This document shows, piece after piece, positions 8,339 to 64,000 of a DNA stretch of 64,000 nucleotides. Location: assembly GCF_001194135.2 (NCBI RefSeq), contig NC_068997.1, positions 14,173,825 through 14,237,824 on the forward strand. The letters are read 5' to 3'. Positions within the stretch are counted from its first letter, which is position 1, and the number at the start of each line of letters is the position of its first letter. Below the pieces are notes generated by a model. That model had not been told where the DNA came from, did no database searches, and was given only the letters and a program-made list of their open reading frames with translations. This DNA comes from Octopus bimaculoides. Its lineage: Eukaryota. The translations under genes and the position numbers were made by a program.

Positions 8339-8916
8339 CAGAGTGCTTGATAGAAAGAATGAAAGAGTGAGGGACAGAGAAGGAGAGAGTGTGTGCTTGT
8401 GTGTGTGTGTGTATTGTGGGGTGGGGTGGGGAGATGACTAAAAGAATGAGAAAAGCCATTACATAAGAACTGTCACAGTAAATTGTTAGCAATAAAAAAA
8501 AAGGAAAAGAATAACAAAATTGCTATACATTTGGTGGGCTCTTGACAGCTCTATACTTTTCTGGAGTTTAAACATAGCCCTAGGTTACTTTTAGGCAACA
8601 ACAGAATCAAAGGCTACATCATCCTCCTCCTCCACATCATCATCATCATCATCGTCATCATCGTTGTTGTTGTTGTTGTTGTCTTTGTCAATAAACACAA
8701 GAGAAAAAAATAATACAAACAGCATTGCAAAAAAAGAAAAAAAATATAGTAACAGTAAAATAGTGGCAACAGTGACTGTTTATAACTGGCAAAGACAATG
8801 CTGGACAAAGTTGTATTTATGGAAGGTAAAATGGGAAAGAAACAGAGGAGAGGAGAAAAAAAAACACATTAAACTGATAATCTGTATGCATGTGAGTGTA
8901 TCTATATATATGTGTG

Positions 8917-8963
<47 letters not shown>

Positions 8964-8984
8964 ATATGTATATATATATATATA

Positions 8985-9150
8985 GGCGTAGGAATGGCTG
9001 TGTGGTAAGTAGTTTGCTAACGAACCACATGGTTCTGGGTTCAGTCCCACTGTGTGGCACTTTGGGCAAGTGTCTTCTACTATAGCCTCGGGCTGACCAA
9101 AGCCTTGTGAGTGGATTTGGTAGACGGAAACTGAAAGAAGCCTATCGTAT
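8985..9150 (+). mobile_element. Family A SINE head (tRNA-like A/B boxes) followed by (TA)/(TG)n
   Basis: GGCGTAGGAATGGCTGTGTGGTAAGT...GGTTCAGTCCCACTG...TTGGGCAAGTGTCTTCTACTATAGCC...GGAAACTGAAAGAAGCC. Confidence 0.9.
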
Positions 9151-9296
9151 ATACGTATGTGTATATATATGTGTGTGTGTATGTGTGTGCGAACCAACTA
9201 ATTGTCACATATTATATTTATAGATAAATTCCTCTATTTTACCTAATATCAAGGTCTCATTCATTCTTTTGGTGTCATATTATTATTATTAATAAT

Positions 9297-58784: not shown

Positions 58785-59464
58785 GTGTAATTTAAGGGAG
58801 ATTTGGCTTCTATTTCTAGCAGGCTGAGTGACTGCCTAAGAGCTAACTTTTTAGTGTATGAAATTACTAGTTGCTGGTTTGCTACTTTTGAAATGTTGGT
58901 TCCAATAAGTACCATTACAAATTGATAATAAGCTTCCTTACAAACAACATAAGAGCCTCTGAATGGTTGCTTAATATCCTAGATATAGCAGTCAGATCTC
59001 CCTCAAACTGCACCCAACTATCTTAAAAATGTAGCCCCTTATGTAATATGAATGGAAGAATAAAAAGTAGCATGGTCTTAACTAGACTAACCAAGAACTA
59101 AATGATGAAAACTATACCAGTTAAAAGTTGGATGATGTTACTCAGTGTGAGATAAATAACAGCTCCATCTTCCACCGTTTACCCAAAACATACACATTAA
59201 AAGAATATAGTGAATAAAGTAGTTCCAAGCATGTTGTTTCTGGAAAAATAAAGATGGAATTGTCATTATTGGATTGCTTTTGATCACATTTAATCTTGAT
59301 CAGTTGCTACCTGGGGGTTAAACACAATGACCAGAAAATATTATAAAATATAACCACATCTTCCTAGAATCACAGCCTACAATCTAAAAATAAAAGTTAA
59401 GTAATACTTGGGTGACATAATTCTAGAGAGTTCTTAGTGACTTCTATTCACAGAAAATAGAAGA

Positions 59465-60118
59465 AACTCTTTATACAAACAGACAGAAAATGGAAGAAGC
59501 CCTTATGACAAACAGACAGAAAATGGTAGAAGCCCTTAAGACAAATAGAGAGAGAAAATGGAAGAAGCCCTTTAGACAAACGGAGAGAAAATGAAAGAAG
59601 CCCTTTAGACAAACAGACAGAAAATGAAAGAAGCCCTTTAGACAAACAGACAGAAAATGGAAGAAGCCCTTTAGACAAACAGACAGAAAATGGAAGAAGC
59701 CCTTATGACAAACAGACAGAAAATGGAAGAAGCCCTTAAGACAAATAGAGAGAGAAAATGGAAGAAGCCCTTAAGACAAATAGAGAGAAAATAGAAGAAG
59801 CCCTTTAGACAAACAGACAGAAAATGGAAGAAGCCCTTTAGACAAACAGACAGAAAATGGAAGAAGCCCTTATGACAAACAGACAGAAAATGGAAGAAGC
59901 CCTTAAGACAAACAGACAGAAAATGGAAGATGCTCTTTAGACAAACAGAGAGAAAATGGAAGAAGCCCTTTAGGCAAACAGATAGAAAATGGAAGAAGCC
60001 CTTTAGACAAACACAGAGAAAATGGAAGAAGCCCTTTAGACAAACACAGAGAAAATGGAAGAAGCCCTTAAGACAAACAGACAAAAAATGGAAGAAGCCC
60101 TTTAGACAAACAGACAGA
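59465..60118. repeat. 33-bp minisatellite, about 20 copies (AGACAAACAGACAGAAAATGGAAGAAGCCCTTT)
   Basis: Directly visible tandem units; some 35-bp variants carry an extra AG. Confidence 0.97.
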
Positions 60119-60742
60119 GATATAGATATCATCGTCAATGTATCATTACATAATATCAACATAATCAATTAAATCAATGGCTAACTAGCGCAATTGACAA
60201 GCTTCTTCCTGTGTTTGTTTCTCTATTCTCCACTTGATTATAATTATAAACTGCGGTTTAACCGATAAATTACCTGCCTCTGGACACCTTCTAACAAAGA
60301 CGGTCCCCACGCAAGTAATCTCCGGGAGTGCCTTCGGATTTAACTTTCCCCTGGTTGCTTAAACACTTCAGCCTACCCCTTGAATGTTTAAACAATCCTA
60401 ACTTATACCTATATNNNNNNNNNNNNNNNNNNNNNNNNNNNNNNNNNNNNNNNNNNNNNNNNNNNNNNNNNNNNNNNNNNNNNNNNNNNNNNNNNNNNNN
60501 NNNNNNNNNNNNNNNNNNNNNNNNNNNNNNNNNNNNNNNNNNNNNNNNNNNNNNNNNNNNNNNNNNNNNNNNNNNNNNNNNNNNNNNNNNNNNNNNNNNN
60601 NNNNNNNNNNNNNNNNNNNNNNNNNNNNNNNNNNNNNNNNNNNNNNNNNNNNNNNNNNNNNNNNNNNNNNNNNNNNNNNNNNNNNNNNNNNNNNNNNNNN
60701 NNNNNNNNNNNNNNNNNNNATATATATATGTATGTATGTATG

Positions 60743-60778
<36 letters not shown>

Positions 60779-60785
60779 CATATAC

Positions 60786-60950
60786 ATGATGGGCTTCTTT
60801 CAGTTTCCATCTACCAAATCCACTCACAAGGCTTTGGTCGGCCCATGGCTATAGCAGAAGACACTTGCCCAAGGTGCCACACAGTGGGACTGAGCCCAGA
60901 GCTATGTGGTTTGTAAGCAAGCTACTTACCACACAACCACTCCTGTGCCT
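60786..60950 (-). mobile_element. Family A SINE head; its microsatellite runs into the gap at 60415-60719
   Basis: GGGCTTCTTTCAGTTTCCATCTACCAAATCCACTCACAAGGCTTTGGTCGG...CTACTTACCACACAACCACTCC. Confidence 0.9.
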
Positions 60951-62899: not shown

Positions 62900-64000
62900 T
62901 CAGAAAAACTTACCAAATTGGTTTGCCAAATTATTGATGTTCTTTGTGGCTTCACAGATGTCTTCTTCATATTCTATCTTCTTTTCAATGACAGCGACAT
63001 TAAATCCAAAACCACTAAATTCCACAACAACCATGTAATCCATTGGCAGCTGGTAGGTTTTTCTTACTGATGAGAATTCTGCAAATGGCTTCAATTGAAA
63101 CTCTTCCAAGAATGTTTTGTTTTCCTTTGTAGCTGTTCCCAAATGAGGCCACTTTTTCAAAGCCTTTTGGATTTCATTTTCTTTCTCCACTTGCATGTAA
63201 TTGCATGTATAAAGCTTTGCTTTATCGTCAGTTTCTGGCAATTTCAATTCCCATTTACCATTTCTCATACGCAGCCAGCTATCAGAGAGAATTAAATCAT
63301 AAAATTTAGTGTCGTAATAGACATCTTCAAAACTTTCTTCTGAAATTTCAACGCCCTTTGCTTGAACAAGTTTTTCAAGATTGAAATTATCAAATTGAAA
63401 TTTCCGTCTTAGCAAAACAACTTTTGCAATTGATTGTGAGATATTGGTTGAAGTCAGATTAAATTTCTGATCAACCATTGGTTGGCCTTTGTGATCTAGT
63501 GTTTCACTTTGAGTAACTGAGGTTTCAATTTTATTCTCTTCTCCGAAATACCATTTGGGAATCTTCTTACAAGAATCAAAATTTGATTCATATACCTTTG
63601 TTTTCAAATCAGTACCAAAACCTTTAGTTTTCATTTCTAATTCTGCCTCAGTTCCGAATCTTGGAGTGTAGCTTAAATTCTTCGATTCAGTCGATGTATC
63701 TATAGCACCTGCTTGTCTCGGATCAGCCCCAATGCCAACAGTTGTCTCAGATTTGAGATTCTTAATTTCTAATTCTGCTTCAGTTCCGAATCTTTGAGTG
63801 TAGCTTAAATTCTTCGATTCAATCGATGTATCTATAGCACCTGGTTGTCTTGGATCAGCCCCAATGCCAACAGTTTTCTCAGATTTAAGATTCTTAATTT
63901 CTAATTCTGCCTCAGTTCCGAATCTTGGAGTGTAGCTTAAATTCTTCGATTCAATCGATGTATCTATAGCACCTGGTTGTCTTGGATCAGCCCCAATGCC
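62900..64000 (-). CDS. THTPA: Partial coding exon: N-terminal 44-aa tandem repeats + linker + CYTH/triphosphate-tunnel domain of thiamine-triphosphatase type. The 5' end lies beyond the window. The 3' end is either the splice donor after 62914 or the TGA at 62900-62902.
   Basis: The ORF 62900-63634 stays open upstream, with no stop from 63634 to 64000. Motifs match vertebrate THTPA in order: RKF, F.D.YYDT (FEDVYYDT), L...D.WLR.R (SDSWLRMR), WELK.P, F...R (FAEFSSVRKTY), FG (SGFGFNVAVIE), and a final helix ending NLANQFG (human HRLSSMLG). A consensus G|GTAAGT donor sits at 62914/62913. The symbol denotes family similarity; orthology is not shown. Confidence 0.85.
   Translation of the reverse strand, partial: GIGADPRQPGAIDTSIESKNLSYTPRFGTEAELEIKNLKSEKTVGIGADPRQPGAIDTSIESKNLSYTQRFGTEAELEIKNLKSETTVGIGADPRQAGAIDTSTESKNLSYTPRFGTEAELEMKTKGFGTDLKTKVYESNFDSCKKIPKWYFGEENKIETSVTQSETLDHKGQPMVDQKFNLTSTNISQSIAKVVLLRRKFQFDNFNLEKLVQAKGVEISEESFEDVYYDTKFYDLILSDSWLRMRNGKWELKLPETDDKAKLYTCNYMQVEKENEIQKALKKWPHLGTATKENKTFLEEFQLKPFAEFSSVRKTYQLPMDYMVVVEFSGFGFNVAVIEKKIEYEEDICEATKNINNLANQFGKFF
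63633..64000 (-). repeat. Coding 132-bp (44-aa) tandem repeat, at least 2.8 copies, unit IKNLKSE(T/K)TVGIGADPRQ(A/P)GAIDTS(T/I)ESKNLSYT(P/Q)RFGTEAELE
   Basis: ATTTCTAATTCTG recurs at 63633, 63765 and 63897 (period 132). The first two copies differ by 7 substitutions, with no indels or stops. Confidence 0.97.

What the first reader, a model, noticed from the sequence alone, without database searches (positions are those of the whole stretch)
62914..63421. THTPA-type CYTH domain that has lost its metal ligands but kept its phosphate-binding residues: candidate triphosphate-binding pseudo-enzyme
Seen: the N-terminal strand reads VLLRRKF where CYTH/TTM enzymes have ExExK (human THTPA IEVERKF). 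Other segments read NYMQ (human EYKE), VVVEFSGFG (VDLDTADFG) and AVIE (GEVE). The basic residues are all retained: K of RKF, both R of WLRMR, K of WELK, and R of SVRKTY. Established: in mammalian THTPA, E7, E9, D145, E157 and E159 bind the divalent metal, and K11, R55, R57, K65 and R125 engage the triphosphate. Inference: four of the five acidic ligands are replaced (L, R, V, V) in an intact reading frame. That pattern fits a protein kept for binding thiamine triphosphate, polyphosphate or another polyanion without hydrolysing it, e.g. a sensor or buffer. The residue mapping is a by-eye alignment.
Basis: partly seen in the sequence, partly recalled or inferred. Interest (0 to 1): 0.75.

Follow-up and report, generated by a model that had tools for sequence, protein, structure and literature searches.

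The report
Metal-site-less octopus thiamine triphosphatase homologue
This octopus exon encodes a well-folded relative of the enzyme thiamine triphosphatase that has lost the glutamates that hold its catalytic metal ions but kept every phosphate-gripping residue, so it is probably a binding module rather than an enzyme; plants and vertebrates already have cases of this kind.

Summary
On the minus strand, 62914-63421 is the C-terminal part of a large exon of Octopus bimaculoides LOC106876779 (809 aa). It encodes a THTPA-type CYTH/TTM domain (Pfam 5e-8; best PDB matches are mouse and human ThTPase; AlphaFold2 pLDDT 88.6, TM 0.77 to mouse ThTPase 5a65).

Three alignment methods agree on the residue mapping:
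- Replaced: E7→L, E9→R, E81→Q, E157→V. Each position is Glu in 141-147 of 150 family representatives.
- Kept: K11, D37, Y39, W53, R55, R57, K65, Y79, R125, E159.

One correction: D145→V is not a loss. Val is common there (32/150), including in the closest canonical relatives.

Octopus sinensis shares the changes. The nearest relatives, two unnamed, probably cephalopod, transcript clusters, keep ExExK and ExE, so the loss is lineage-specific.

The exon is transcribed and correctly spliced, and no RNA editing was seen. A-to-I editing could not restore Glu at any of the four codons. The domain is more conserved between the two octopus species than the adjacent linker.

Most likely it is a non-catalytic tunnel that still binds a triphosphate ligand. 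This resembles the inactive TTM domain of Arabidopsis TTM1/2 and, more loosely, vertebrate Jhc1. dN/dS, a search for a canonical paralogue and biochemistry remain undone.

The parts
62914..63421 (-). In-window part of the CYTH/TTM (THTPA-type) domain. It corresponds to residues 624-792 of O. bimaculoides XP_052829955.1 (P0152, 809 aa). The final 17 residues (GFQKLSLLDLVQQAEAY, probable plug helix) lie in an exon outside the window.
63401..63415 (-). Degenerate ExExK hallmark motif, reading L-L-R-R-K. The codons are TTG CTA AGA CGG AAA. E7->L, E9->R, K11 kept.
   Evidence: E7 is Glu in 141/150 representatives and E9 in 142/150.
63317..63325 (-). DxY motif retained (D37-V-Y39; Y39 is part of the Y39/K65 catalytic dyad of mammalian ThTPase).
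   Evidence: Motif definition from PMC8233210. Dyad from PMC8615392.
63263..63277 (-). WxRxR motif retained (W53, R55, R57). This is the ThTPase-defining thiazole-stacking Trp plus the beta/gamma-phosphate arginines.
   Evidence: PMC8233210.
63242..63250 (-). E63-L-K65 (WELK) retained; K65 contacts the triphosphate.
63191..63199 (-). Y79-M-Q. Tyr79 is kept. The near-invariant Glu81 (147/150) is replaced by Gln (codon CAA).
63062..63064 (-). R125 retained (AGA).
63020..63028 (-). V-V-E at the D145-L-D147 positions. Val at 145 is a common family variant, also present in the canonical closest relatives. D147->E is conservative.
62984..62992 (-). Half-degenerate ExE motif of strand beta-8, reading V-I-E. 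E157, the metal-1 ligand that is otherwise conserved family-wide, is Val (GTC). E159, the metal-2 ligand, is kept.
   Evidence: Roles of the two Glu from PMC8233210.
62912..62913 (-). GT splice donor. RNA contigs and raw reads stop here and continue into the last exon (mRNA ...NQF|GFQKLSLLDLV), which is not in the window.
63422..63632 (-). Non-repetitive linker between the repeats and the CYTH domain, in the same exon and frame.
   Evidence: It differs at 8/71 residues between O. bimaculoides and O. sinensis, against 7/186 in the domain.
63633..64000 (-). The last 2.8 of eight 44-aa (132-bp) tandem coding repeats of the N-terminal, repeat-rich, net-acidic region. The exon runs on past the window end.

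Best explanation
The exon encodes the C-terminal tunnel domain of the octopus member of a molluscan and lophotrochozoan 'long-form' thiamine-triphosphatase-like protein. That protein has a short conserved N-terminal peptide motif, a long repeat-rich, net-acidic region, and one CYTH/TTM domain.

In the Octopus lineage the domain kept its eight-stranded tunnel fold. It also kept every residue that grips the triphosphate (K11, R55, R57, K65, R125), stacks the thiazole ring (W53) or forms the DxY/K65 dyad. It lost the acidic patch that holds the two catalytic metal ions: E7->L, E9->R, E81->Q and E157->V. Only E159 and a conservative D147E remain.

Catalysis in this family needs metal 1 to orient the triphosphate and metal 2 to activate the attacking water. 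Without them, hydrolysis should be abolished or drastically reduced. Meanwhile the tunnel has lost four negative charges and gained one positive charge, so it can still bind a (thiamine) triphosphate or other polyphosphate ligand, perhaps more tightly.

The domain would then act as a ligand receptor or anchor for the long N-terminal region, much as proposed for the inactive tunnel domain of Arabidopsis TTM1/2.

Shown: the fold, the residue pattern, lineage specificity, expression, and conservation between two species.
Inferred: loss of catalysis, retained ligand binding, and the receptor role.
For: - Homology and fold: Pfam CYTH; ThTPase is the best PDB sequence match; AlphaFold2 pLDDT 88.6 and pTM 0.75; top Foldseek hits are mouse and human ThTPase, TM 0.77.
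- Residue table over 150 family representatives. The octopus is one of only two representatives with just 2 acidic residues at the 7 acidic positions scored; 137 of 150 have 6 or 7. All 10 non-metal functional positions are retained.
- No register shift helps. There is no acidic residue in AKVVLLRRKFQF.
- The same substitutions occur in O. sinensis XP_036366379.1.
- The nearest relatives P0002 and P0003 share the N-terminal IDHFE(E/D)(K/R)F motif and the C-terminal GFQxLS tail. They form a clade with the octopus sequences at 89% NJ bootstrap. They keep IEVERKF/IEIERKF, E81 and ExE.
- The octopus branch is accelerated: 25-31 unique changes against 9-16 (p between 0.0015 and 0.07 with lophotrochozoan outgroups), and branch length 0.64 against 0.35-0.40.
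- Between the two octopus species the domain differs at 7/186 residues and the adjacent linker at 8/71 (Fisher p = 0.034).
- The exon is transcribed in at least 18 RNA runs and spliced at the annotated donor. There is no intron read-through and no variant letters in raw reads.
- Codons TTG, AGA, CAA and GTC cannot be edited A-to-I into Glu.
- Literature. ExExK and ExE coordinate metals 1 and 2, and WxRxR and DxY bind the substrate (PMC8233210). The acidic patch is needed for two-metal catalysis (PMC4641920). The AtTTM1 tunnel, with ExExK Glu->Gln, is described as catalytically incompetent. It shows no metal density, keeps a basic tunnel proposed to bind a (tri)phosphate metabolite, and the R299A/R301A version fails to complement (PMC9582702).
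Against: - No biochemical data exist for this protein.
- AtTTM1/2 lack ExExK and ExE yet show weak pyrophosphatase activity in vitro, so residual or altered catalysis is possible.
- E159, E147 (the D147 position), D37 and E63 remain and could hold one metal together with the substrate.
- The constraint evidence is thin: two close species, protein level only, p = 0.03. dN/dS was not computed.
- With deuterostome outgroups the rate acceleration is not significant.
- The organisms behind P0002 and P0003 are unnamed transcript assemblies.
- I could not establish whether Octopus also has a canonical ThTPase gene. This matters for the physiological reading.
- The structure tool returns no coordinates, so tunnel geometry and electrostatics were not inspected.
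Confidence: 0.55

Rival explanations
1. It is still an enzyme, with altered chemistry. The domain would hydrolyse a phosphoanhydride (for example pyrophosphate, or ThTP slowly) using a substrate-borne metal held by the remaining acidic residues E159, E147 (the D147 position) and D37. It would then be a low-activity or re-specified TTM, not a pseudoenzyme.
For: - AtTTM1/2 lack ExExK and ExE but keep W/YxRxR and DxY, the same pattern as here. They are reported to have weak pyrophosphatase activity (PMC8233210; PMC9582702).
- The Y39/K65 dyad and D37 are intact.
- Fish THTPA is a naturally low-activity orthologue that persists (PMC8615392).
Against: [quoted passage not shown] Here it is Val.
- Both ExExK glutamates are gone, and one of them is now Arg.
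- The AtTTM1 tunnel is called catalytically incompetent in the structural study, and its phosphatase activity is low.
Confidence: 0.15
2. It is a protein-interaction module, as in Jhc1. After catalysis was lost, the barrel was recruited as a structural or protein-binding domain. The retained basic residues would serve folding, or would bind an acidic or phosphorylated protein segment, possibly the protein's own acidic Ser/Thr-rich repeats. They would not bind a small triphosphate.
For: - Vertebrate Jhc1 is a THTPA-derived pseudoenzyme. It works through a protein contact at a former catalytic position (bioRxiv 10.64898/2026.02.04.703868).
- The octopus protein carries a 614-residue N-terminal region with net charge -18 and eight 44-aa repeats that the closest relatives lack.
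- The octopus branch is accelerated.
Against: - Jhc1 lost the basic tunnel residues as well, and is predicted to open up.
- Here all of them, plus the thiamine-stacking Trp, are kept.
- The model closely matches the mouse and human ThTPase tunnel structures.
Confidence: 0.2
3. It is a decaying relic. The CYTH domain would be functionally dispensable in octopus and drifting, carried along only because the N-terminal part of the protein, or the transcript, is still used.
For: - Several catalytic residues are lost.
- The octopus branch is roughly 1.7 times longer than in the sister lineage.
- Other lineages have lost or inactivated ThTPase without obvious harm: birds, pig and fish (PMC8615392).
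Against: - The frame is intact in two species and there are no indels in the domain.
- All 10 substrate-side functional residues are retained even though overall identity to the nearest relative is only 43%.
- The domain diverged about three times less than the adjacent linker between the two species.
- The fold is predicted with confidence.
- Expression and splicing are robust.
Confidence: 0.1

Closest known systems
Mammalian 25-kDa thiamine triphosphatase (THTPA; PDB 3tvl, 5a64, 5a65)
   Same: - It is the best sequence and structure match.
- The CYTH tunnel fold is the same.
- The ThTPase-defining WxRxR motif, the DxY motif, K11, K65, Y79 and R125 are all present.
   Different: - ExExK reads LxRxK, E81 is Gln, and the first Glu of ExE is Val.
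- The domain sits at the C-terminus of an 809-aa protein, behind a long repeat-bearing region.
- The C-terminal tail is short.
Tunnel domain of Arabidopsis TTM1/TTM2 (PMC9582702; cluster 7 of PMC8233210)
   Same: - The metal-binding glutamates of ExExK and ExE are lost.
- The basic tunnel, W/YxRxR and DxY are retained.
- The domain is described as catalytically incompetent and is proposed to bind a (tri)phosphate metabolite as a regulatory module.
   Different: - The origin is independent: plant, fused to a P-loop uridine kinase and a mitochondrial tail anchor.
- The substitutions are Glu->Gln rather than Leu, Arg and Val.
- Weak PPase activity has been reported.
Jhc1, the THTPA-derived ciliary-tip pseudoenzyme of non-mammalian vertebrates (bioRxiv 10.64898/2026.02.04.703868)
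   Same: It is an animal protein derived from THTPA that lacks the ExExK motif and has taken on a non-catalytic role.
   Different: - Jhc1 is a paralogue that coexists with a normal Thtpa.
- It has also lost the basic triphosphate-binding residues.
- It is predicted to have an open conformation.
- By contrast, the octopus gene groups with canonical relatives as their apparent orthologue and keeps the whole substrate-binding half.
Naturally inactive or weak THTPA orthologues (pig, fish) and THTPA loss in birds (PMC8615392)
   Same: These are lineage-specific losses of ThTPase activity in an otherwise conserved metazoan gene.
   Different: - The review attributes the pig enzyme's inactivity only to 'several amino acid changes'.
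- It does not report loss of the hallmark ExExK/ExE motifs for the pig or fish enzymes.
Vtc4 polyphosphate polymerase tunnel domain (PMC4641920)
   Same: It is a TTM tunnel in which the acidic patch positions are occupied by non-acidic (basic) residues that contact a polyphosphate chain.
   Different: - Vtc4 is an active polymerase.
- It has four basic replacements and belongs to the membrane VTC complex.
- It is only a remote relative (Foldseek rank 40).

Membership tests
CYTH / triphosphate tunnel metalloenzyme superfamily (Pfam PF01928) | Significant match to the family profile | tested here: met
   The match scores 33.4-34.2 bits against a gathering cut-off of 23.2. It covers only profile positions 15-132. 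Canonical relatives match positions 1-173 at 51-66 bits.
CYTH / triphosphate tunnel metalloenzyme superfamily (Pfam PF01928) | Eight-stranded beta-barrel tunnel fold | tested here: met
   The AlphaFold2 model has pLDDT 88.6. Foldseek finds 48 PDB matches at E <= 0.001, and nearly all of the strongest are CYTH/TTM structures. The best is mouse ThTPase at TM 0.77. This is a prediction, not an experimental structure.
CYTH / triphosphate tunnel metalloenzyme superfamily (Pfam PF01928) | N-terminal ExExK hallmark motif (metal coordination plus substrate Lys) | tested here: not met
   The motif reads L-L-R-R-K. Only the Lys is kept. The octopus protein is therefore a structural and evolutionary member but not a metalloenzyme-type member.
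CYTH / triphosphate tunnel metalloenzyme superfamily (Pfam PF01928) | [quoted passage not shown] | tested here: not met
   The motif reads V-I-E. The first Glu, the family-wide metal-1 ligand, is Val. The second is kept.
Thiamine triphosphatase (THTPA) subfamily | W/YxRxR motif with the thiazole-stacking aromatic residue | tested here: met
   W-L-R-M-R at 63263-63277. Motif definition from PMC8233210.
Thiamine triphosphatase (THTPA) subfamily | Closest relatives are animal THTPAs; it groups with canonical cephalopod-type sequences | tested here: met
   The top named hits are annotated as thiamine-triphosphatase-like, from Saccoglossus, Branchiostoma, Asterias and others. The NJ clade with P0002 and P0003 has 89% support.
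Thiamine triphosphatase (THTPA) subfamily | ThTP hydrolase activity | not testable with these tools
   This needs a recombinant enzyme assay.
Pseudoenzyme (non-catalytic homologue retained by selection) | Loss of residues essential for catalysis | tested here: met
   E7, E9, E81 and E157 are replaced.
Pseudoenzyme (non-catalytic homologue retained by selection) | Gene expressed and maintained under purifying selection | tested here: inconclusive
   The gene is expressed and spliced. The frame is intact in two species, and the domain is more conserved than the linker (p = 0.034). No second octopus nucleotide sequence was obtainable, so dN/dS was not computed.
Pseudoenzyme (non-catalytic homologue retained by selection) | Demonstrated absence of catalytic activity | not testable with these tools
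   This needs biochemistry.

The most novel reading that the evidence does not exclude
The molluscan and lophotrochozoan long-form CYTH proteins are not housekeeping ThTPases. Their architecture is a conserved N-terminal (F/Y)(I/V)D(H/R)xE..SP peptide, a long N-terminal region with no Pfam domain, and a THTPA-type tunnel. On this reading they form a family of scaffold or receptor proteins whose tunnel reads out a triphosphate or polyphosphate metabolite.

In several lineages the tunnel has independently lost its metal sites while keeping WxRxR, with a recurrent E9->Lys/Arg swap. Examples are Octopus, the unionid mussel Potamilus, and three further unnamed clusters. If Octopus has no second CYTH gene, it would also be an animal with no ThTP-hydrolysing enzyme and a dedicated ThTP-binding protein.
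Probability: 0.2. Interest if true: 0.65.

Novelty: new member of a known kind. Interest (0 to 1): 0.4.

Why it matters
Thiamine triphosphate is an old puzzle. It is found in nearly all organisms and has no agreed function. [quoted passage not shown]

A natural THTPA-type domain with the metal sites removed but all ThTP-contacting residues kept would matter in three ways:
- It would add another lineage in which ThTPase activity was probably given up.
- It would be a ready-made 'substrate trap', useful for studying ThTP or PPPi binding without turnover.
- It would be a third, independent example that triphosphate tunnel domains are repeatedly converted from enzymes into binding or regulatory modules. 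The earlier examples are plant TTM1/2 and vertebrate Jhc1.

The interest is moderate, not high. The kind of event is already documented, the gene is already annotated, and the functional claim is untested.

Tried and rejected
- The search for homologous proteins with the window protein returned no hit at all, not even the protein itself. With a 9-sequence profile it returned no mollusc, although three were in the query. Its word index evidently misses these proteins, so it could not be used to look for octopus paralogues or other octopod orthologues.
- The next exon was searched for in the window using the 30-nt loose end of the RNA contigs. There were 0 matches with up to 2 mismatches. It lies further away; the O. 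sinensis gene spans 396 kb.
- DNA of the O. sinensis orthologue could not be fetched because the gene range is too long. This blocked dN/dS.
- Contigs of four other organisms from the same studies (B, C, D, E) were laid at 80% likeness. Nothing orthologous appeared.
- Small 'DNA?' runs X33-X35 turned out to be spliced RNA identical to the window, so they gave no polymorphism data.
A paper search for its run accessions found nothing.
- The first read-laying runs failed: the server was busy, and the 20-kb stretch was rejected because of simple repeats.
- Mapping AtTTM3 Glu-90 onto human E81 by adding AtTTM3 to the alignment was unreliable in the middle of the domain. That equivalence is therefore only a by-position inference.
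- The first NJ and bootstrap script timed out and was rewritten.
- Rejected: the idea that A-to-I recoding restores the acidic residues. The codons make it impossible, and no variant reads were seen at about 10-30x depth.
- Rejected: an assembly error. An independent genomic contig is identical.
Full report
WHAT IS THERE

The feature is on the minus strand. Translating 63997 down to 62900 gives one open frame with three parts:
- 2.8 copies of a 44-aa (132-bp, 96% identical) repeat at 63633-64000;
- a 70-residue linker;

A canonical donor (G|GTAAGT) ends the exon at 62914. Assembled RNA contigs from four runs, and raw RNA reads from two more, cover 62913-63660 without a single difference. They have zero depth in the intron. 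They continue into an exon that reads GFQKLSLLDLV. That exon is not in the window. In Octopus sinensis the gene spans 396 kb. An independent genomic contig reproduces 62850-63662 exactly, so the sequence is not an assembly artefact.

IDENTITY

An exhaustive HMMER scan of 1.84 billion representatives found the protein itself (P0001, 792 aa). The window encodes its residues 432-792 exactly. Its 90% cluster holds two named proteins:
- XP_052829955.1, 'uncharacterized protein LOC106876779 [Octopus bimaculoides]', 809 aa;
- XP_036366379.1, 'thiamine-triphosphatase-like [Octopus sinensis]'.

The window is therefore O. bimaculoides.

The domain is CYTH by Pfam (33.4 bits against a cut-off of 23.2). 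Its best solved relatives are mouse and human thiamine triphosphatase (3e-8). An AlphaFold2 model is confident (pLDDT 88.6, pTM 0.75). Its top Foldseek hits are all ThTPase structures (5a65_A at TM 0.77), followed by archaeal, bacterial and plant TTMs.

THE RESIDUE PATTERN

I aligned 170 domains with human THTPA. I wrote the human sequence from memory and verified it as 100% identical to PDB 3tvl_A.

Four positions are replaced in the octopus (Glu count among the 150 representatives in brackets):
- E7 -> L (141)
- E9 -> R (142)
- E81 -> Q (147)
- E157 -> V (142)

Two acidic positions survive:
- E159 is kept (141).
- D147 becomes Glu (142 have Asp).

All of K11, D37, Y39, W53, R55, R57, E63, K65, Y79 and R125 are kept. 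Each is conserved in 133-150 of 150, apart from E63 (Glu in 115, Gln in 32).

The HMMER pairwise alignment, the small MAFFT alignment and the structure match all give the same register. No acidic residue occurs anywhere in AKVVLLRRKFQF, so no shift can rescue the motif.

Position 145 is Asp in only 106 of 150 and Val in 32, including the canonical nearest relatives. D145V is therefore not a loss.

In the terms of Vogt et al. 2021 (PMC8233210), the octopus domain lacks ExExK and the first, metal-1, Glu of ExE. It keeps the ThTPase-defining WxRxR and the DxY motif.

The four replaced codons are TTG, AGA, CAA and GTC. A-to-I editing cannot turn any of them into a Glu codon. No variant letters were seen in raw RNA reads at about 10-30x depth.

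LINEAGE SPECIFICITY

O. sinensis shows the identical pattern. The next-best hits are P0002 and P0003, at 46% and 45% identity (474 and 493 aa). They are transcript assemblies from runs SRR27666068/80 and ERR3431203.

They share two features with the octopus protein:
- the N-terminal IDHFE(E/D)(K/R)F motif;
- the unusual short C-terminal tail GFQ(K/M)LS.

They form a clade with it at 89% NJ bootstrap. They have IEVERKF/IEIERKF, E81 and ExE intact. I infer that they are non-octopod cephalopods. Their organisms could not be named.

The octopus branch is longer: 0.64 against 0.35-0.40. It carries 25-31 unique substitutions against 9-16 with lophotrochozoan outgroups (p between 0.0015 and 0.07). 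With deuterostome outgroups the difference is not significant.

IS IT MAINTAINED?

- The frame is intact in both species, with no indels.
- Between the two species the CYTH domain differs at 7 of 186 residues, and the adjacent linker at 8 of 71 (Fisher p = 0.034).
- None of the seven differences touches a functional position.
- The domain is only 43% identical to its nearest canonical relative, yet all ten substrate-side residues are kept while four of six conserved acidic ones are gone. Selective loss of this kind argues against simple decay.
- A proper dN/dS could not be computed, because no second octopus nucleotide sequence was obtainable.

MECHANISM

Established knowledge: TTM and ThTPase catalysis uses two metals held by the ExExK, ExE and acidic-patch glutamates. 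Metal 1 orients the triphosphate and metal 2 activates the water. The basic residues bind the phosphates (PMC4641920; PMC8233210).

Inference: with both ExExK glutamates, the metal-1 Glu and E81 gone, and an Arg inserted at the E9 position, the octopus tunnel has lost four negative charges and gained one positive. It should not support two-metal hydrolysis. It should still bind a triphosphate, with W53 available for the thiazole ring of ThTP.

The closest functional precedent is the tunnel domain of Arabidopsis TTM1/2 (PMC9582702):
- the ExExK glutamates are replaced;
- no metal density is seen;
- the basic tunnel is kept and is proposed to coordinate a (tri)phosphate metabolite;
- the tunnel arginines are required in vivo.

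The same proteins show weak pyrophosphatase activity in vitro. This keeps the rival 'altered enzyme' explanation alive.

A second precedent is Jhc1, a vertebrate THTPA-derived pseudoenzyme (bioRxiv 10.64898/2026.02.04.703868). It lost the basic residues too and works through protein contacts.

I rate the explanations as follows:
- non-catalytic ligand-binding module: 0.55
- protein-interaction module without ligand: 0.20
- residual or altered enzyme: 0.15
- decaying relic: 0.10

COMPARISON AND NOVELTY

Evolutionarily and structurally the domain belongs to the CYTH superfamily and the THTPA subfamily. It fails the two motif tests that define the metalloenzyme. It works most like the AtTTM1/2 tunnel.

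No paper in the searchable library links thiamine triphosphatase and octopus. The databases call the gene 'uncharacterized' or 'thiamine-triphosphatase-like'. The specific observation therefore appears to be undescribed. The kind of event, a TTM tunnel turned into a non-catalytic module, is already known twice. I therefore classify it as a new member of a known kind, with moderate interest (0.4).

[quoted passage not shown] I could not test that.

WIDER CONTEXT SEEN ON THE WAY

Many mollusc and annelid homologues are long proteins of 330-970 aa. Examples come from Pinctada, Haliotis, Nucella, Solemya and Owenia. They carry a conserved N-terminal peptide, (F/Y)(I/V)D(H/R)xE..SP, and no other Pfam domain.

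Four further long-form clusters also have degenerate ExExK motifs while keeping WxRxR:
- P0117 from the mussel Potamilus streckersoni: IQIKRMF
- P0084: VEIKRKF
- P0123: FHIKRKY
- P0128: FTISRTF

Three of the four have E9->Lys. They cluster together in the NJ tree at 78%. This hints that loss of the metal site is recurrent in this protein family, or defines a paralogous subfamily.

Noticed in passing
window 63633-64000 (-), continuing beyond the window end: There are 132-bp tandem coding repeats, 96% identical. Eight 44-aa units (GADPRQPGAIDTSIESKNLSYTPRFGTEAELEIKNLKSEKTVGI) occupy residues about 210-565 of the 809-aa protein. The nearest canonical relatives P0002 and P0003 lack them. The RefSeq protein differs from the window at 3 residues in one repeat, so the repeat array varies between assemblies or is hard to assemble.
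   Followed up: partly
outside the window (N-terminus of P0152 and of P0002, P0003, P0007, P0023, P0026, P0038, P0042, P0057, P0062, P0084, P0117, P0123, P0128): A short N-terminal peptide motif, (F/Y/S)(I/V)D(H/R)xE followed by ..(S/T)P(E/D)(K/R)E, is conserved in all the long-form mollusc-type CYTH proteins. It has no Pfam match and its role is unknown. It looks like a docking motif.
   Followed up: partly
proteins P0117 (Potamilus streckersoni KAK3596884.1), P0084, P0123, P0128: Other long-form CYTH proteins also have degenerate ExExK motifs (IQIKRMF, VEIKRKF, FHIKRKY, FTISRTF) with WxRxR kept. The E9->Lys/Arg swap recurs. They cluster together in an NJ tree at 78%. P0128 matched the query in two stretches.
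   Followed up: partly
window 1-62913 (intron of the same gene): The last coding exon is not within the 62.9 kb downstream of the donor. The O. sinensis gene model spans 396 kb, so the final intron is very large. The intron sequence contains 15 N-gaps (10-620 bp) and is rich in TA/CA microsatellites. GC content is 33%.
   Followed up: partly
window 59448-60168: An intronic 33-bp tandem repeat (CCTTTAGACAAACACAGAGAAAATGGAAGAAGC, 93% matches) creates long spurious ORFs on both strands (SVCLKGFFHFL... and RQTERKWKKPF...).
   Followed up: no
window about 8817-9197, 24647-25030, 27401-27772, 31384-31740, 51609-52443, 60728-60916: A dispersed repeat recurs in both orientations in the intron. Its translation reads ...SVSVYQIHSQGFGQPEAI..EDTCPKCHTVGL.PE.CG... 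It is probably a SINE-like octopus element.
   Followed up: no
tool behaviour (vs 29): The word-indexed protein search did not return the window's own protein or any mollusc homologue, although they are in the collection. Run X4 holds 100% of the exon's words, yet showed zero depth on the exon when laid at 80% likeness.
   Followed up: no
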